Sequence record: OR413585.1
Length of the DNA: 64,000 bases
Direction: 5' to 3' (one strand)
In this document: piece after piece, positions 12,415 to 31,185 of the stretch
Layout of the letters: every line of letters starts with the position of its first letter
How positions within the stretch are numbered: the first letter of the stretch is position 1
The notes under the pieces: generated by a model
Seen by the model: only the letters and a program-made list of their open reading frames with translations
Told to the model about the DNA's origin: nothing
Database searches by the model: none
Translations under genes and position numbers: made by a program

Positions 12415-12990
12415 ATGAACTTGTATCGCATCGGGTTTTACCGAAACGAGATGCCTGAATCGGTTTTGGTTGTCTTAGCCGAAAACGAGGAGCAGGCCAA
12501 ATCCTTCTGGCCGGTTAGCGCAGAGCGTCCAGCGGTTGCGTGCTGCTACGACGGCGCTGTGTCTACCCCGATGGTTACGCCTGGGGTGGTTCTGAAGCAA
12601 GGCCGTTGGGATGATTATTCCCATCCTGGTTTGGAATTTGTTTCCGAATCCGCCAGACACACCTGGAATCTTACCACGGGTAAAACCAGAGTGTATTTCG
12701 GCCACCAAGCCAAGCAACCGTCGCTCATCAAGCTGTACCTGGTTTACAGCGACGTCGCTACCGAAGACTATGTCGACGCCGGAATCATCGTCGGGGCAAC
12801 AACCCCCGAGGCGGCATTCGCACATTGGGACGGCGATAAACCCGGAATCGTTTCGGTTTGTGAGCTACCACTTGAAGCCGGTTTGGTTACGAACATCAAG
12901 TGTGAGCAAGGCCAGGAGCTGACTTGGATGCGCCAGGATTACCTGACGGAAACGACATTCGAGTACACACCGAGGAAGGTGACCCAATGA
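12415..12990 (+). CDS. Hypothetical protein with two copies of a small domain
   Basis: GGAG RBS; MNLYRIG..VVLAENEEQA and IKLYLVY..IIVGATTPEAA resemble each other and the 13714 protein. Confidence 0.7.
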   Translation: MNLYRIGFYRNEMPESVLVVLAENEEQAKSFWPVSAERPAVACCYDGAVSTPMVTPGVVLKQGRWDDYSHPGLEFVSESARHTWNLTTGKTRVYFGHQAKQPSLIKLYLVYSDVATEDYVDAGIIVGATTPEAAFAHWDGDKPGIVSVCELPLEAGLVTNIKCEQGQELTWMRQDYLTETTFEYTPRKVTQ

Positions 12991-13478
12991 CGACGATAGC
13001 GTTCGATGGAAAAGTCTTAGCTGCTGACGGCCAGTTAACCCGTGGGTCGAATATCTGCAACCTGAATACCCAGAAGTTATTCATCTGCCCTTCTGACGAG
13101 GAATGGTGGATTACTGGTGAACGGATTGTGGCGTTCGGAGTAAGCGGCGACATCACAGGACAATTGGCCCTGCTGGAAACTGTCCGCTTGAGACCTGGTT
13201 ACAAGGGGTTAACGCAAAGCTCGCAGTTACCTGCGAAGATGGATTTTACTTTCCTGATGCTTCTGGCCTCAGGGAAAGCGATAGTCGGTGGGAAGCGTGA
13301 AGACGACGTGACGTTGTGGTGGAGTGAAGCCACACCACCTCTGGCAACCGGAAGTGGTTACGAGTATGCGTTGGGTGCGATGAAGATGGGCGCGAATGCG
13401 GTTCGTGCTGTTGAGATTGCGTCCGAATGCGATATCTACACCGGTGGTGAGATTAGCACTTACGAATTACGGAGGTGA
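12987..13478 (+). CDS. HslV/proteasome-beta-like Ntn-hydrolase protease (163 aa)
   Basis: Start moved to the ATGA overlap at 12987, giving M-TTIAFDGKVLAADGQ; later ATGSGYEYA and IASECDIYTGG match HslV motifs. Confidence 0.75.
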   Translation: MTTIAFDGKVLAADGQLTRGSNICNLNTQKLFICPSDEEWWITGERIVAFGVSGDITGQLALLETVRLRPGYKGLTQSSQLPAKMDFTFLMLLASGKAIVGGKREDDVTLWWSEATPPLATGSGYEYALGAMKMGANAVRAVEIASECDIYTGGEISTYELRR

Positions 13479-13571
13479 ATCATGCGGGAGTCAGAAGCAC
13501 GCAAGCTTGACCCCATCAATCGCCTGCGATAACGGGGTAGCGCATCCGTATAAACACGTTTAAAGAATTCT

Positions 13572-13647
13572 AGGAAAGTGACGCAATTGGTAGCGTACCG
13601 GTCTCCAAAACCGGCTGTTTAGAGTTCGAGTCTCTACTTTCCTGCCA
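13572..13647 (+). tRNA. trnW: tRNA-Trp (CCA)
   Basis: Complete 76-nt cloverleaf: AGGAAAG/CTTTCCT acceptor, CCGGT-CTCCAAA-ACCGG anticodon arm, TAGAG-TTCGAGT-CTCTA T arm, encoded CCA end. Confidence 0.93.
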
Positions 13648-13713
13648 CATTTAGCCAACAAGCCCATGATTCAAAGCAGAGTGACACCGAATGTCTAACT
13701 GCGGAGAATAATC

Positions 13714-13956
13714 ATGAACTTGTATTTGCTAGAACGAACTGACGATATCGGGTATGATGAATTTGATTCCATAATCGTGGCGGCTCCTACGGAGCAAGCC
13801 GCGTGTGCAATTCCTCCCGACCGTGGTCATTGGATGGACTGCCGCTGGTTACCGAAAGAGCGCTGGGATGAAGGGCTTACCCTGACCGTTACTCTTATCG
13901 GTACTACGCATTATCCTGCTGGGACCGTCGTTCATGAATCGTTCAATGCTGGCTAA
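13714..13956 (+). CDS. Hypothetical protein (80 aa), single-domain paralog of the 12415 protein
   Basis: GGAG RBS; MNLYLLE..IIVAAPTEQAA; followed by an AGTGGGC-TTCG-GCCCACT hairpin. Confidence 0.7.
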   Translation: MNLYLLERTDDIGYDEFDSIIVAAPTEQAACAIPPDRGHWMDCRWLPKERWDEGLTLTVTLIGTTHYPAGTVVHESFNAG

Positions 13957-13974
13957 ACAGTGGGCTTCGGCCCA

Positions 13975-15000
13975 CTAACCCTATTCGAGCCGTGATACTT
14001 ACTCAGATTGTGCGGGTTGATGTCCCGCATGAGCCGGTAGCAGCTCAGACCTACGGTAAGCCGATAAATCCGTAGCAGCCAGGTACACAAAGCACCAGGT
14101 CGCTTGTACAGGATGCTGGGTATCTGACCGGTCATAACCTCATTCGATACGAGACACGTTTATGCATGAAATACTCCAGTACATCAGGATGTTGATTTCC
14201 AACGTCCAGTTCTGGGTATTCAATCATGTTTGGTTTACAGGCGATGGGTTTTCCCGCAAGGGCCCCACTTACAGACTGGCGTCTCCACGACAACCGTCCC
14301 TAGGGGACAGGCAAGCACCGGCCCATTAAGCCGCTACGCTACGCCTGTAAATCCACAATCTGATAACCGAATGGGATTGAGTTCCCAGTGTTAGGGTGAC
14401 TGTGTGTCACCGTAGGCGCGGTACCTCATACGGCCGGAACGCCACGAATGTACGTGATAGCGGGTGGTGCTTGGAGGCGCTAAGACCTGACCTTGCGGCC
14501 AGGCTCAGAAGAAGAAGTCCATCACCCGCATTCAGAAATGAATTTAGGTTAATTATTATTTATGGAAGTGATGAAATCGTTTACGTGATAACTTAGTAGT
14601 ATGCAACGAACAATACCAGAGTGACTTTACGAGGTTACTGTGGTATATGTCGGTGCTCCGGGCAACGTGTTGCCGCAGATAAGCCCGAGGGAGCTGAGTG
14701 CACTAACACACGCCGGGATGCACCGGCACCTTACAATGGGAGCGCTGTCACCATCAGTGATGACAGGAGTGAAGGATTCGTACCTCACTCGACTGGGCGG
14801 AAGCCTGGGCGTTCCCCCATCTTCACATCATGGCCGGCTTGCCGGTTCAACGTAGACGTCTCGTAAGAGATTTCCAGTCAGGTAACTGATAACACACCTA
14901 AGCGTCGACCTTGGACGTATGGTGTCTGGTTAAGTCCCCCGAAACGGAAACCAGTAGGGGTGTGGTACGTTGAGTGTAACTATCATGATGCCATGAACAA
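13975..15000 (+). ncRNA. Putative structured non-coding RNA(s)
   Basis: ORF-poor; nested long stems (14232-14353, 14460-14529, 14613-14646) and GNRA loops (GCAA, GTAA). Confidence 0.45.
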
Positions 15001-15001
15001 T

Positions 15002-15071
15002 GGCTTTGTAGCTCAGGTAGGTAGAGCAACCTCTTCGAGGAAGGTCGCCGGTTCGAGTCCGGTCAAAGCAA
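15002..15071 (+). ncRNA. tRNA-like element with truncated anticodon arm
   Basis: GCTTTG/CAAAGC acceptor, GCTC/GAGC D arm and GCCGG-TTCGAGT-CCGGT T arm are normal, but the anticodon arm is only 13 nt (ACCTC-TTC-GAGGA); no CCA. Confidence 0.6.
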
Positions 15072-15150
15072 GAGCAGCGAAGTTAGAGGAATTAACACCC
15101 GACTCATAATCGGATATTTCGACGGTTCGAATCCGTCCGTTTGCTCGCCC
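15072..15150 (+). tRNA. Atypical tRNA with CAT anticodon (Met- or Ile2-like)
   Basis: CCGA-CTCATAA-TCGG anticodon arm, GACGG-TTCGAAT-CCGTC T arm, GTTA/TAAC D stem; 8-bp bulged acceptor stem, no U8, no encoded CCA. Confidence 0.55.
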
Positions 15151-15155
15151 CATTT

Positions 15156-15484
15156 GTGTTATCCTTATCCCGAAGGCATTCGAAATAAGACGCGTATCCA
15201 CACACGGGTCAAGGGTAACACGAACCACTTCCGCGGTCACCGTGTCCATTGCCGCCTACCTGCATGGGCTGTCCTCCGACACGGTGACTTCGGGCCAACT
15301 TACAGGCCAGGGCCGTTTGGGTTTTTCTTACGCATCCATCCAGAGCCACCTCGCGCCCTAGTCTGTATACCCCTTTTCTGTTCCTGGTTTGCCAACTAAA
15401 TCAATTAAGCCTGGTGCGTTGCCCTGGGAACAGAAAAACTTATTCGGTTACACACCGAACCCACCCACGAGGGATATGTCGTGG
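15156..15484 (+). ncRNA. Array of consecutive ~55-65-nt hairpins
   Basis: 11-bp stems at 15156/15211, 15236/15278 and 15374/15427, an interrupted stem at ~15301-15366, and two small hairpins. Confidence 0.45.
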
Positions 15485-15525
15485 ACTACCAATAGAAGCA
15501 GCAATAGTAGTAAGAAGGAAGCAAC

Positions 15526-16347
15526 ATGTTTACAGTTAAACGTGTAATTGATGGTGACCGCATTATTACCGAACATGAAAAAGTTCGTATCGGTGACCGT
15601 AAGTCTCGTGTATTCCGCGAGGCATTAAAAATGCTCGAGAACGAGCGCTTCGACATCGTTGTCGATGATGAAAAGTTAGCCCTTAATCCGGGGTTAAAAC
15701 GCGTTGCCCCTGATGTGCCTGATCCGAACACCATGCACCCGTCCGATTATTACAGTTGGCTAACCCGAATGCTTAAAGATCAGGAAGCTGCCCATTTATA
15801 CCTGAAACAGCTTTTCCCGAATCTGGTTATTCCTGATTTGGACGACGTTGCGTTGTTTAACTGCGATGGACGTGGCTTTATCAGCTATGTGCTGGGTGAA
15901 AAAAGTGATGCTGTTCTGGTACTGGACACAAATTCCCGTATACCAGATGCTGTGGCTAGCATACGTGGTGAAATCATCGGTTACGGTACTCCCCCAGAGA
16001 AATTAGGCTGGTACAAACCATCTCCTGATAGCGACATGGCGATCATTGTCTACACTCAGGAAGAACTGCAACAAGTCGAATTAGAGCCTGGTCCATCTAT
16101 CGAGTTCAGTGATGTCCAGGAGCAGTCGCAGTGGATTAACGGTGAGTCTGTTGTTACTGTTTTAAAAGGCGCTCGCCCTGGCGACCGGTCAGTCGATGAA
16201 CTGATTGGCGCAATGTGCATCGAAGAAGAATCTGGATACGATCCTGATAACCAGATCAGTACCGGTGCGTTGTACGAACTGTTTTATAAAGGCGACGAAG
16301 TCTACGTGGTTAACTCTCACGGTAAGACTACCGACGTCCTTCGCTGA
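15526..16347 (+). CDS. Hypothetical protein (273 aa)
   Basis: AAGGA RBS, intact ORF. Confidence 0.75.
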   Translation: MFTVKRVIDGDRIITEHEKVRIGDRKSRVFREALKMLENERFDIVVDDEKLALNPGLKRVAPDVPDPNTMHPSDYYSWLTRMLKDQEAAHLYLKQLFPNLVIPDLDDVALFNCDGRGFISYVLGEKSDAVLVLDTNSRIPDAVASIRGEIIGYGTPPEKLGWYKPSPDSDMAIIVYTQEELQQVELEPGPSIEFSDVQEQSQWINGESVVTVLKGARPGDRSVDELIGAMCIEEESGYDPDNQISTGALYELFYKGDEVYVVNSHGKTTDVLR

Positions 16348-16437
16348 ATTAGCTAACGCCCAGTAGCTATGTTCCTGACGATTAGCCCTCGTCTGACCTT
16401 GTAAGACCTTGTAGATTTACATGCCAACACCAGGGAA

Positions 16438-16480
16438 GTCCTCACTCTTCGGAGTGAGGACAACTCTTTTATTTTTTTTT
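16438..16480 (+). terminator. Intrinsic terminator
   Basis: GTCCTCACTC-TTCG-GAGTGAGGAC followed by a T-rich tail. Confidence 0.8.
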
Positions 16481-16497
16481 GTATCCCAAATATTCAC

Positions 16498-16512
16498 AGA
16501 TAGATATTACCT
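16498..16512 (+). promoter_or_regulatory. Candidate early promoter/operator AGATAGATATTACCT
   Basis: Variant of a 15-mer repeated at 19464, 27372, 27468, 35928, 37344 and 41087; resembles the phiKZ early motif TATATTAC. Confidence 0.55.
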
Positions 16513-29461: not shown

Positions 29462-30829
29462 GTGAGAAAGGTACCAAAATTCTACGGAATATCCGGCCGG
29501 TTGGTTAGTCAGGATAACTATTTGTCCGATTTGCAAATAGAAGCTGCTGCCAAAGGTATTAAACCACCCACTATTATTAACGATGTCGCCGTTAACGGGG
29601 ATGCGATCGAGGTTGCTGAACTTATCGATCGCATGGTACAGAACAGAATCGTTGACGAAGAACTGAACTCTGCACCGATTTGTAGTTTGGATTGTCCGGC
29701 ACCGATCGCGCATCGTTACAATCTCGGTTGTAAGTGTCCGACGTGTGGCTATGTTGTAACTGAACATCGAATTGAATCCGATGTCTGGTTACGTGCACCC
29801 GATGAAATGGGTAACTTCGTCAACCCACGATTCTGGGCAATGTTCAATGCTTTCTTTAATAGCAAGTTGAAGAAGTTTGAACGTAACAAGGTCACTATCG
29901 AACGCGGTAATGACTTGATGATGTGGATGATTGACCCGTATTACCGTATAGAAGAACCAGACGGTAAACGCGCACATGCTGTGAAACGTGTATTGGAAGA
30001 ACATGGTTTCGTTCGTGGCTTGCGCAATCTGGTTGATAACCACGTTAGTATCTTTAACATCCTTACCACGCCAGAAGCCTGGAAGGAAATCTTCGCACCT
30101 AATCGGCATAACGCCGCTGAAGGTGAACGCTTACGTTTACAATGGAAGGAGCTATTCGAAACGCAACGTCACGCATTCTTCCCAAGACATTTACCGCTAA
30201 TCTCCTCTAAACTTATCGTTACTGAGGAAGGTCGTCGTGGTGTCATGGTAGACCCAGTGTTCACGGGTGCTATTGATGCGGTGAAAAATATCGCGTTGCT
30301 CTATACGCGGCGTAAAGCGATCGAACCACGTTTTCTGATTAGTCGCGCTTTGAAGGCGAACCGTCAGTTAACGTACTTCCACATGGACTTCCGTCGTGAG
30401 TCTATGGAAGGTAAACCGGGTGACTATCGTGCGAAATTGGGTTCTACCCATATCCCGTTCGGTGGTCGTGCAACCATCTCACCTATCTCAGAACCACACG
30501 ATGCCTGGAAGTTAAAAGCACCGTGGCGTTGGATGGTTGGGTTGATGTCGACCCACATCGAGAACAAACTGCTACGACGGGGTTATTCGTCACGGCAGTG
30601 TGAACGTATCGTTGCGAAAGCGGCAATGCAGTATGACCCGCTTGTAGACGAAATCTTTAAAGAACTGATTCGTGAATCCCCAGGCGGTCTTGGGATCATG
30701 GTCATACCGTTACGTAACCCAACGCTGGTACAGTTGTCTATTCAAACGCTGTACATCGATGAAGTTGTTACCGATGTTAACCAGTGTTCGCTGCGTATCT
30801 CTGACCGTGTGATCAAGATGGCTAACGGT
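29462..30829 (+). CDS. Non-virion RNA polymerase beta' N-terminal subunit, exon 1
   Basis: Zn-ribbon CKCPTCG, GGRATISP and LRNPTL motifs; the exon ends at ..MANG just before the catalytic DFDGD. Confidence 0.85.
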
Positions 30830-31185
30830 TCGAAAAGAGCCCCATCGGACGGGAAACCTCTGATGCGTATTCTCCTGAAATGCTGGGAAACCCTAAAGCG
30901 TATCTACCAGAAATGGGGACGAAAGTCTGAAACAACAGATACGATGACCTACGCTAAACAATACTGCTAAGGGTTGTGTTGATGGGTAATCAGCAGCGAA
31001 GCCTCGTGAGAGGAACGTTCAACGACTATCGCTGAAATGCGAGTAGGGGTCCTAGTGGACTTCGAAGTGGGAGAACACCTAAGGCGAAAGCTATGGTGAA
31101 GATATAGTCTGTGCCTTATCGAGAGATAAGGAGGGTGTCTTAGCACACCTGCTGTATACGGAAACGGTATACGGTGGACAAACAG
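30830..31185 (+). mobile_element. Group I intron (IA-like, 356 nt, no homing endonuclease ORF)
   Basis: P1 GGT|TC-GAAAA-GAGCC with U.G pair; P AAATGCTGGGAA; Q AATCAGCAGC; R GTTCAACGACTAT; S AAGATATAGTCT; P3 TTCTCC/GGAGAA; P7.1 and P7.2 hairpins; terminal G. Splicing restores the frame N-G-D-F-D-G-D. Confidence 0.9.

What the first reader, a model, noticed from the sequence alone, without database searches (positions are those of the whole stretch)
15002..15071. tRNA mimic with a deleted anticodon
The acceptor (6 bp plus a terminal G.A), D arm, AGGTC variable loop and T arm are canonical. The anticodon arm is 13 nt instead of 17 and closes a TTC/CTTCG loop, so it cannot decode. Keeping everything except the anticodon suggests function rather than decay. 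Possibilities are a decoy for tRNA-binding defence proteins or synthetases, an RNase P/Z processing signal that releases neighbouring RNAs, or a Y-RNA-like scaffold (inference).
Basis: partly seen in the sequence, partly recalled or inferred. Interest (0 to 1): 0.7.

Follow-up and report, generated by a model that had tools for sequence, protein, structure and literature searches.

The report
Conserved anticodon-less tRNA look-alike in phage
A giant Salmonella phage carries a tRNA-shaped RNA gene whose anticodon loop is only three bases, so it cannot decode. All related phages keep a non-decoding version joined to a tRNA(CAU), under selection for its fold, so it probably does something other than read codons.

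Summary
Window 15002-15071 (+) scores 40.9 bits on the Rfam tRNA model. It has a 6-bp acceptor plus a G1.A72 non-pair, and a canonical D arm, AGGUC variable loop and T arm. Its anticodon arm is CCUC-UUC-GAGG, with a 3-nt loop. The window is a Salmonella jumbo phage of the SPN3US group (Seoulvirus).

It is neither a private deletion nor a sequencing error. 34 phage records carry it. Homologues sit at the same place in every Seoulvirus and Machinavirus phage examined. They share G1.A72, A73, no encoded CCA, and direct fusion to a tRNA(CAU).

Across 17 sequences, all 187 acceptor and T-stem base-pair cells pair, and 9 of 11 pairs show compensatory double changes. The anticodon arm differs in every lineage (3-8-nt loops or long extensions). 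The SPN3US group lost the canonical tRNAs found in relatives' clusters (Tyr, Glu, Asp, Ile, Gln; Asn in most) but kept this unit and tRNA-Trp.

Best reading: a selected, non-decoding tRNA-like RNA. It probably descends from the tRNA-Thr of a T-even-like Thr-Ile(CAU) dimer, is made in a dimeric precursor, and is cut by RNase P. I favour a cis role in maturation of the partner tRNA. A trans (decoy or scaffold) role is not excluded. No direct RNA-end data exist.

The parts
14997..15003 (+). Leader motif ACAATGG, ending in G1-G2 of the mimic (U-1/G+1 context). A second copy lies at 14733-14739, in front of another cloverleaf-like RNA.
   Evidence: Most relatives keep (A)ACAAUGG or ACAAAGG in front of the homologue. 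SPN3US proper has a deletion running exactly between the two copies. The motif is not enriched in the window overall (11 found, 10 expected), so it is not a general promoter.
15002..15071 (+). The tRNA-like RNA ('mimic'), 70 nt, from G1 to A73. No CCA is encoded.
   Evidence: Rfam tRNA 40.9 bits. Cloverleaf MFE. 17 homologues. 100% of 187 pair cells paired, 9 of 11 pairs with double changes.
15003..15008 (+). Acceptor 5' strand (positions 2-7), pairing with 15064-15069. G1 (15002) faces A72 (15070) and is never paired.
   Evidence: all 6 pairs covary. G1.A72 occurs in 17 of 17 homologues. It occurs in 0 of 104 canonical tRNAs of the same clusters.
15011..15027 (+). D arm (GCUC / AGGUAGGUA / GAGC). 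GG in the loop is kept in every lineage.
15029..15041 (+). Truncated anticodon arm: A.A non-pair, 4-bp stem 15030-15033/15037-15040, 3-nt loop UUC at 15034-15036.
   Evidence: Within the SPN3US group the loop reads UUC, UUU or AUC and position 15029 is A or G, while the stem is unchanged. In other lineages the arm is replaced by other hairpins.
15042..15063 (+). Variable loop AGGUC (15042-15046) and T arm (15047-15063).
   Evidence: T-stem covariation. GGTTC.A..CC is invariant.
15064..15071 (+). Acceptor 3' strand CAAAGC, then the invariant unpaired A72-A73.
15072..15146 (+). Partner tRNA(CAU), anticodon at 15105-15107, fused to the mimic with no spacer. G15072 can pair with C15146, giving 8 consecutive acceptor pairs. 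One U is bulged in the 3' strand. No CCA is encoded.
   Evidence: Rfam tRNA 30.6 bits. Fold. Covariation in 11 relatives. Annotated tRNA-Ile2(cat) or tRNA-Met(cat) in relatives. ARAGORN misses it here.
14738..14822 (+). Context: a second cloverleaf-like RNA (7-8-bp closing stem GGGAGCG/CGUUCCC plus three hairpins) behind the other ACAATGG copy.
   Evidence: Fold z=-2.56. 95% identical in SPAsTU and 83% in pEa29, with compensatory changes. Absent from SPN3US proper.
13572..13647 (+). Context: the only canonical tRNA of this phage, tRNA-Trp(CCA), with encoded CCA. It opens the ~1.9-kb region (13650-15525) that is poor in protein-coding genes.

Best explanation
This is a real gene for a non-decoding, tRNA-shaped RNA that selection has kept. 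It forms the upstream half of a two-cloverleaf unit (mimic + tRNA(CAU)) shared by all Seoulvirus and Machinavirus jumbo phages examined. It probably descends from the tRNA-Thr of a T-even-like tRNA-Thr/tRNA-Ile(CAU) pair. Shown: the 'top half' (acceptor helix, T arm, GG-containing D loop that forms the elbow) is kept by compensatory evolution, and the anticodon arm is free to change. Inferred: the two cloverleaves are transcribed together as a dimeric precursor. Host RNase P reads exactly the acceptor/T/elbow part. It cuts 5' of G1 and at the junction with the partner, which leaves the mimic ending at or next to A73. The always-unpaired A72-A73 serve as the short single-stranded linker, or leader, that the cut at the partner needs. 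My preferred function is in cis: a folded, nuclease-resistant 5' partner that keeps the unusual, CCA-less, 8-bp-acceptor tRNA(CAU) correctly folded, processed and stable. Once released, the mimic could be CCA-tailed and persist as a stable small RNA. Sub-confidences: real, selected, non-decoding RNA about 0.9; origin from a Thr-Ile(CAU) dimer about 0.5; RNase P-processed dimer about 0.6; main role in cis about 0.35-0.4. The overall confidence given is for the statement as a whole, including the cis role.
For: Structure and score. Not private: 34 phage records cover at least 80% of 14990-15160, nearly all at 95% identity or more, and metagenome contigs carry it too. Homologues lie directly 5' of tRNA(CAU) in every relative examined, 17 distinct sequences in two genera whose flanking protein is only 26-28% identical. 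Covariation: 187 of 187 cells paired, 9 of 11 pairs with double changes, covariation score 0.737 against 0.296 in shuffles, collapsing when the 3' partners are slid by 1-3 columns. Within the SPN3US group 4 of 70 columns vary, all unpaired (15029, 15034, 15036, 15058), against 33% of columns in the first 300 nt of the neighbouring gene. Family hallmarks: G1.A72 with A73 in 17 of 17, against 0 of 104 canonical tRNAs. There is no encoded CCA, whereas 104 of 114 ARAGORN-called tRNAs in these clusters encode it; eight of the ten exceptions are calls of the mimic or its CAU partner. The SPN3US group lacks the Tyr, Glu, Asp, Ile and Gln tRNAs (and in most members Asn) present in SPAsTU, yet keeps the mimic + CAU unit. 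Dimer parallel: the best non-family BLAST hits are T-even tRNA-Thr(UGU) (80.6% over 58 nt). In RB51 that gene is followed after 1 nt by tRNA-Ile(CAU). No relative's cluster holds a tRNA-Thr. The T4 Thr-Ile precursor is an RNase P substrate, and disrupting tRNA structure in T4 precursors lowers tRNA yield (PMC11143913). RNA-seq assemblies of a close relative contain 14838-15730 in one contig at a depth like its neighbours.
Against: No end-mapping or small-RNA data exist. The RNA-seq evidence is assembled contigs only, shows no discrete 70-nt species, and cannot exclude DNA carry-over. RNase P cleavage, CCA addition and co-transcription are all inferred. A purely cis role does not obviously require the whole elbow and an invariant G1. 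Other tRNAs in the same clusters mature without such a partner. AUA codons are not enriched (5.1 per 1000), so the reason for keeping the partner is itself unclear. The tRNA-Thr ancestry rests on one weak BLAST similarity (E=4e-3) plus gene order, and the type B and C homologues no longer resemble any tRNA body.
Confidence: 0.4

Rival explanations
1. Trans-acting tRNA mimic. After release, and probably CCA addition, the RNA acts on its own. It would be a decoy, sponge or scaffold for a protein that reads the acceptor end and elbow rather than the anticodon. Candidates are a host toxin or defence enzyme that modifies or cuts tRNA 3' ends or acceptor stems, a tRNA-modifying or CCA-adding enzyme, or a phage protein.
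For: The conserved parts are exactly the anticodon-independent recognition surface. The invariant G1.A72 with A73 looks like an identity mark, not a by-product. The RNA is retained while canonical tRNAs were lost. By established knowledge, a 1:72 mismatch weakens EF-Tu binding in bacterial initiator tRNA, which would keep such an RNA off the ribosome.
Against: No partner protein is identified. Flanking genes have no recognisable function. A stoichiometric decoy against a catalytic enzyme needs high abundance, which the contig depths do not show. Strict fusion to tRNA(CAU) in all lineages is not required by a trans role.
Confidence: 0.25
2. Anticodon-independent aminoacylated RNA. The mimic is CCA-tailed and charged by a synthetase that reads only the acceptor or elbow. 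It then donates or sequesters an amino acid outside ribosomal decoding.
For: The acceptor, discriminator A73 and L-shape core are intact. The 1:72 mismatch would disfavour EF-Tu (established knowledge, not tested here).
Against: No known acceptor-only identity set is present. There is no G3.U70 (AlaRS), no long variable arm (SerRS) and no G-1:C73 on the mimic (HisRS). Acceptor pairs 2-7 vary freely between lineages, which argues against a sequence-specific synthetase contact.
Confidence: 0.05
3. Non-functional relic: a tRNA pseudogene that is decaying slowly and is carried along next to a useful tRNA.
For: It cannot decode. Its anticodon arm drifts. Annotation pipelines call it tRNA-OTHER, Asp, Ile(aat), Pro(cgg) or '???' in different genomes.
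Against: Every acceptor and T-stem cell is still paired in 17 sequences, with 45 double-change cells. It is several times more conserved than the neighbouring coding gene. It is kept in lineages that deleted true tRNAs. An element immediately upstream (14733-14996) was deleted in SPN3US proper without touching it.
Confidence: 0.07
4. Y-RNA-like scaffold (YrlA type) for a Ro60/Rsr-type protein.
For: Salmonella has Rsr and YrlA, and YrlA mimics tRNA (PMC4201824, listed).
Against: No YrlA or Y RNA match at E<=10 in 12500-16500. The only weak YrlA hits in relatives (27-29 bits against a gathering score of 69) lie downstream of the mimic, on the long-arm CAU partner and tRNA-Asn. The topology is opposite: here the acceptor is open and the anticodon arm is capped. 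In YrlA, to my recollection, the Ro-binding stem closes the molecule.
Confidence: 0.03
5. A decoding tRNA misread because of an assembly error or an unrecognised intron.
For: None, beyond the good tRNA body.
Against: The same 3-nt loop appears in dozens of independent assemblies and metagenomes, with natural variation (UUC, UUU, AUC). No relative has a consistent anticodon.
Confidence: 0.01

Closest known systems
T-even phage dimeric tRNA precursor tRNA-Thr/tRNA-Ile(CAU) (T4, RB51)
   Same: Same order (Thr-like body, then a CAU tRNA) and the same tight spacing: 1 nt in RB51, 0-1 nt here. The D arm, variable loop and T arm are similar (80.6% over 58 nt). The T4 dimer is a classic RNase P substrate.
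   Different: In T-even phages both halves are decoding tRNAs with encoded CCA and a paired 1:72. Here the upstream half has no usable anticodon loop, has G1.A72, and neither half encodes CCA.
tRNA-like processing signals (plant mitochondrial t-elements; mascRNA from MALAT1)
   Same: These are cloverleaf-like RNAs that do not decode. They are recognised by RNase P/Z through the acceptor/T/elbow and define the ends of neighbouring RNAs. This rests on established knowledge, not on a test here.
   Different: They are eukaryotic or organellar and are not homologous. There was no Rfam mascRNA match on the mimic. Here the neighbour is itself a tRNA.
Bacterial Y RNA-like YrlA (RF02553)
   Same: A non-decoding tRNA mimic with T and D arms that occurs in Salmonella and some phages.
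   Different: There is no model match. The topology is opposite: an open acceptor with a capped anticodon arm. No rsr gene was seen among the flanking genes checked.
Ordinary tRNA pseudogenes or 'tRNA-OTHER' calls in phage genomes
   Same: It is detected by tRNA models with a reduced score and cannot be assigned an anticodon. SPN3US annotates it tRNA-OTHER.
   Different: It is maintained by compensatory evolution across two genera and outlives true tRNAs.
Bacterial initiator tRNA acceptor end (C1xA72, G2:C71, C3:G70, A73)
   Same: It has a 1:72 non-pair followed by G2:C71 and C3:G70 (in most lineages) and A73. The initiator sequence is recalled from established knowledge, not tested here.
   Different: The mismatch is G.A, not C.A. 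3:70 is U-A in type B homologues and 2:71 is A-U in one. There is no CAU anticodon, so MetRS recognition is not expected.

Membership tests
tRNA (Rfam RF00005; decoding transfer RNA) | Match to the family covariance model above the gathering score | tested here: met
   40.9 bits against 29, full length 1-71. Canonical tRNAs of relatives score 44-76 bits, and several mimic homologues are not detected at all.
tRNA (Rfam RF00005; decoding transfer RNA) | Seven-nucleotide anticodon loop with U33 and a purine at 37 on a 5-bp stem | tested here: not met
   3-nt loop on a 4-bp stem plus an A.A non-pair. ARAGORN makes no call. Homologues have 3-8-nt loops or long extensions and no shared anticodon.
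tRNA (Rfam RF00005; decoding transfer RNA) | Seven-bp acceptor with a paired 1:72, a D arm and a T arm | tested here: inconclusive
   Six pairs plus G1.A72. The D and T arms are canonical. The 1:72 non-pair is invariant in the family and absent from 104 canonical tRNAs.
tRNA (Rfam RF00005; decoding transfer RNA) | 3' CCA (encoded or added) and aminoacylation | not testable with these tools
   CCA is not encoded, unlike in 104 of 114 tRNA calls in the clusters. Addition and charging need experiments.
T-even-type dimeric tRNA precursor (Thr-Ile) | Two cloverleaves separated by fewer than 5 nt, with a CAU tRNA downstream | tested here: met
   A73 at 15071 and the partner from 15072/15073. The arrangement is the same in all relatives. 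RB51 has a 1-nt spacer.
T-even-type dimeric tRNA precursor (Thr-Ile) | Co-transcription and separation by RNase P | not testable with these tools
   The only evidence is one RNA-seq contig that spans both. The cleavage is known for T4.
T-even-type dimeric tRNA precursor (Thr-Ile) | Sequence homology of the upstream member to tRNA-Thr | tested here: inconclusive
   The best non-family hits are T-even and prophage tRNA-Thr, at 78-81% over 55-58 nt with E=4e-3 to 2.
YrlA / bacterial Y RNA (RF02553) | Match to the family model, with a Ro-binding stem formed by the 5' and 3' ends | tested here: not met
   No hit at E<=10 in 12500-16500. The molecule's ends form an open acceptor stem.
tmRNA tRNA-like domain | Detection by ARAGORN's tmRNA search; G3.U70; a tag reading frame | tested here: not met
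   No tmRNA call. Position 3:70 is C-G.
mascRNA-type tRNA-like small RNA (RF01684) | Match to the family model | tested here: not met
   No hit on the mimic.

The most novel reading that the evidence does not exclude
The mimic is a dedicated trans-acting 'anticodon-less tRNA'. It would be released from the dimer by RNase P, CCA-tailed, and kept off the ribosome by its G1.A72 end. It would then be used to occupy or recruit a factor that reads the tRNA acceptor end and elbow. One candidate is a host anti-phage toxin that attacks tRNA 3' ends. Another is a phage protein involved in handling tRNA in nucleus-forming jumbo phages. Together with the other cloverleaf-like RNAs of this locus, it would define a set of phage tRNA-shaped regulatory RNAs.
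Probability: 0.25. Interest if true: 0.8.

Novelty: new variant of a known kind. Interest (0 to 1): 0.55.

Why it matters
Phage tRNA genes are usually discussed only as codon-supply or anti-defence spare parts. Odd tRNA calls are usually dismissed as pseudogenes. This element is a counter-example. Across two genera of jumbo phages, selection has kept a tRNA that cannot decode. It stayed in a lineage that discarded almost all of its true tRNAs.

If its role is in cis, it shows that one half of a dimeric tRNA precursor can survive as a pure folding and processing module. If its role is in trans, it is a compact natural tRNA decoy or scaffold with a defined, testable signature: G1.A72, A73, an intact elbow and a free-form anticodon arm.

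Published descriptions of these phages count a single tRNA. The locus is therefore under-annotated.

Tried and rejected
1. A cUUCGg tetraloop cap: a recount gives a 3-nt loop, and the loop sequence varies (UUC, UUU, AUC) among close relatives.
2. Y RNA, tmRNA and mascRNA membership: no model matches.
3. ACAATGG as a general phage promoter: not enriched, 11 found against 10 expected. It resembles the phiKZ late-promoter motif TATG(+1) (PMC7598289) and would put a start at G1, but the motif is not kept in all relatives, so I leave it as an idea.
4. Function from neighbours: Pfam gives nothing and PHROGs gives only 'unknown function' plus an HslV-like peptidase. The protein atlas gives no credible lead for the downstream gene.
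5. Codon demand for the partner tRNA: AUA is 5.1 per 1000 codons and 8.9% of Ile codons, which is not obviously raised.
6. Wider distribution: two junction and anticodon-arm patterns scanned over viral contigs, and one over metagenome contigs, returned only Seoulvirus/Machinavirus-type genomes plus one false positive.
7. Nearest host tRNA: only weak tRNA-Thr hits in E. coli genomes (E=2).
8. Expression: the single read-laying run returned assembled contigs. These show presence in RNA libraries but neither ends nor a small-RNA species.
9. Sigma-70 promoter and terminator scans of 13400-15700 are at chance level.
10. Literature: no paper in the searchable library describes the element.

Full report
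**What the window is.** The 2.2 kb around the finding is 100% identical to Salmonella phage SPLA5c and 95-99% identical to about 30 other SPN3US-like jumbo phages (genus Seoulvirus). The finding lies in a ~1.9-kb stretch (13650-15525) that is poor in protein-coding genes. This stretch runs from an HslV-like peptidase gene plus tRNA-Trp (13572-13647) to a conserved gene of unknown function at 15526.

- G1 (15002) faces A72 (15070).
- Six pairs join 15003-15008 to 15064-15069, followed by A73.
- The D arm, the AGGUC variable loop and the T arm are canonical. By inspection, the residues that usually make tRNA tertiary contacts are in place.
- The anticodon arm is 13 nt: an A.A non-pair, a 4-bp stem and a 3-nt loop UUC at 15034-15036.

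The Rfam tRNA model matches full length at 40.9 bits, above the gathering score of 29 (E=3.2e-5 for the whole window), with the anticodon loop collapsed. ARAGORN does not call it. The free-energy minimum is the cloverleaf. My own idea that the cap is a cUUCGg tetraloop was wrong. The loop has three bases.

**It is not a private deletion.** 34 phage records cover at least 80% of 14990-15160, almost all at 95% identity or more. Independent metagenome assemblies carry the same short arm. Among close relatives only four of the 70 columns vary. All four are unpaired positions: 15029, the loop bases 15034 and 15036 (UUC, UUU, AUC), and T-loop base 15058. In the first 300 nt of the neighbouring protein gene, 33% of columns vary.

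**More distant relatives keep the RNA but not the arm.** A homologue lies at the same place in every Seoulvirus and Machinavirus genome examined. These include SPAsTU, the pEa_SNUABM phages, Huxley, ChrisDB, Caitlin, pSal-SNUABM-04 and two IMG/VR genomes. In each case it sits immediately 5' of a tRNA(CAU), which is usually followed by tRNA-Asn. The flanking protein of the Machinavirus phages is only 26-28% identical to the window's.

All 17 distinct sequences share three features:
- G1 opposite A72, then A73, then the G that begins the partner's helix;
- a canonical T arm;
- a D loop with GG.

The anticodon arm is different in each lineage.
- SPAsTU has a roughly 40-nt extension that ends in a GAAA-capped hairpin.
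- pSal-04 has a 6-bp stem with a 5-nt loop.
- Huxley and pEa6 have long irregular inserts.
- The 'type B' Erwinia phages have 5-6-bp stems with 4-8-nt loops.

ARAGORN assigns Ile(aat), Pro(cgg) or '???' to three of them and nothing to the rest. Rfam scores fall from 42 bits to undetectable. No lineage has an intact decoding tRNA at this position.

**Selection on structure.** I counted the six acceptor pairs (2-7 with 66-71) and five T-stem pairs on the 17-sequence alignment. All 187 cells form standard pairs. Nine of the 11 pairs show changes on both sides, in 45 cells. The covariation score is 0.737, against 0.296±0.033 in shuffles (0 of 500 shuffles reach it). Sliding the 3' partners by 1-3 columns drops pairing to 26-49%.

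The G1.A72 non-pair is a family hallmark. It occurs in 17 of 17 mimics and in none of 104 canonical tRNAs from the same clusters. The lack of encoded CCA is another. 104 of 114 ARAGORN-called tRNAs in these loci encode CCA. Eight of the ten exceptions are calls of the mimic or its CAU partner.

**Retention while true tRNAs were lost.** SPAsTU carries Tyr, Glu, Asp, Ile, Gln and Asn tRNAs in this region. In the window the block holding the first five is missing at the 14731/14733 junction. tRNA-Asn survives in only a few SPN3US-like genomes. The mimic + tRNA(CAU) unit is present in all of them. SPN3US proper has a further deletion of 14733-14996, running exactly between two ACAATGG copies. That deletion stops at the mimic's first base.

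**The partner.** 15072-15146 scores 30.6 bits as tRNA, with the loop CUCAUAA. Its helices covary in 11 relatives. Its anticodon arm is nearly invariant across genera. It can form eight consecutive acceptor pairs, including G15072 with C15146, and in Seoulvirus it has one bulged base. Some Erwinia phages add a covarying long variable arm. Relatives annotate it as tRNA-Ile2(cat) or tRNA-Met(cat).

**Likely origin.** Outside the family, the best matches to the mimic are T-even phage tRNA-Thr(UGU) genes (80.6% over 58 nt, E=4e-3) and prophage tRNA-Thr in E. coli. In RB51, tRNA-Thr is followed after one nucleotide by tRNA-Ile(CAU). This is the classic T4 Thr-Ile dimeric precursor cut by RNase P (PMC11143913). 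No tRNA-Thr occurs in any relative's cluster. I infer, with moderate confidence, that the mimic is the former Thr half of such a dimer.

**Mechanism.** These points are shown: the RNA is structurally constrained, cannot decode, is fused to a tRNA(CAU), and lacks CCA. The rest is inferred. The conserved parts are what RNase P and the CCA-adding enzyme read on tRNA (established knowledge). The unit would be made as a dimeric precursor and cut at G1 and at the junction. The unpaired A72-A73 would give the flexible leader that the second cut needs.

I favour a cis role, as a folded 5' partner that secures maturation and stability of the unusual partner tRNA. My reasons are that the fusion is invariant and that structural damage to T4 tRNA precursors lowers tRNA yield. 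A trans role as a decoy or scaffold for an acceptor- or elbow-reading factor is the main rival. It would better explain the invariant G1.A72. A decoy for anticodon nucleases is unlikely, and a Y-RNA-like role is not supported.

**Expression.** RNA-seq assemblies from a roughly 97%-identical phage include 14838-15730 in one contig, at a depth similar to neighbouring genes. These are contigs, so they show neither ends nor a small RNA, and DNA carry-over cannot be excluded.

**Novelty.** GenBank records label the element tRNA-OTHER (SPN3US) or tRNA-Asp (Proteus phage 7). Papers on these phages report one tRNA. I found no description of it in the searchable literature. It is a new variant of a known kind (tRNA-like RNAs, phage dimeric tRNA units). 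On present data it is limited to one clade of jumbo phages that infect enterobacteria and close relatives.

Noticed in passing
window 15072-15146: The partner tRNA(CAU) is itself unusual. It can form eight consecutive acceptor pairs including G(-1):C73, has a bulged U in the 3' strand, encodes no CCA, and has an anticodon arm that is nearly invariant across genera. ARAGORN misses it here. In pEa4, pEa6, ChrisDB and pEa9 it has gained a covarying ~22-nt long variable arm.
   Followed up: partly
window 14738-14822: A second cloverleaf-like RNA: a 7-8-bp closing stem GGGAGCG/CGUUCCC and three hairpins, one capped GGAA. It has the same ACAATGG leader. Fold z=-2.56. It is 95% identical in SPAsTU, shows compensatory changes in pEa29, and is deleted in SPN3US proper.
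   Followed up: partly
L005 about 2340-2416 and L008 about 2320-2405 (Machinavirus loci): Another unannotated tRNA-like element lies just 5' of the mimic. It has acceptor GUUUCCU/GGGAAAC, a T arm with GGUUCAACUCC, an encoded ACCA, and an oversized anticodon-arm loop.
   Followed up: no
window 14296-14533: A block conserved at 70-79% identity in every Seoulvirus and Machinavirus locus compared, inside the gene-poor region. Only short ORFs overlap it (14230-14394, 14396-14596), and the second of these has no family match. It could be a small gene or another RNA.
   Followed up: no
window 13719-13952: Assembled RNA-seq depth is about 40 times that of the surroundings in one run (132,452 against about 3,000). 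It coincides with the 80-aa ORF 13714-13956 (phrog_5444, unknown function).
   Followed up: no
window 30810-31131: A group I intron match (RF00028, 67.9 bits) overlaps the 3' end of ORF 29462-30970. The flanking ORFs have no Pfam match.
   Followed up: partly
window 14733-14739 and 14997-15003: Two direct ACAATGG copies bracket the segment that is missing in SPN3US, Lh1B, EC001, SPLA3, JN03, SEGD1 and SaP7. The first copy also marks the point where relatives carry their tRNA cassette. This suggests a recombination hotspot for cassette gain and loss.
   Followed up: partly
loci L003-L019 (relatives' tRNA clusters): All canonical tRNAs in these jumbo-phage clusters encode their 3' CCA (104 of 114 calls). 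The ten exceptions are eight mimic or CAU-partner calls, the tRNA-Asn of pEa29, and one tRNA cut by a locus end.
   Followed up: yes
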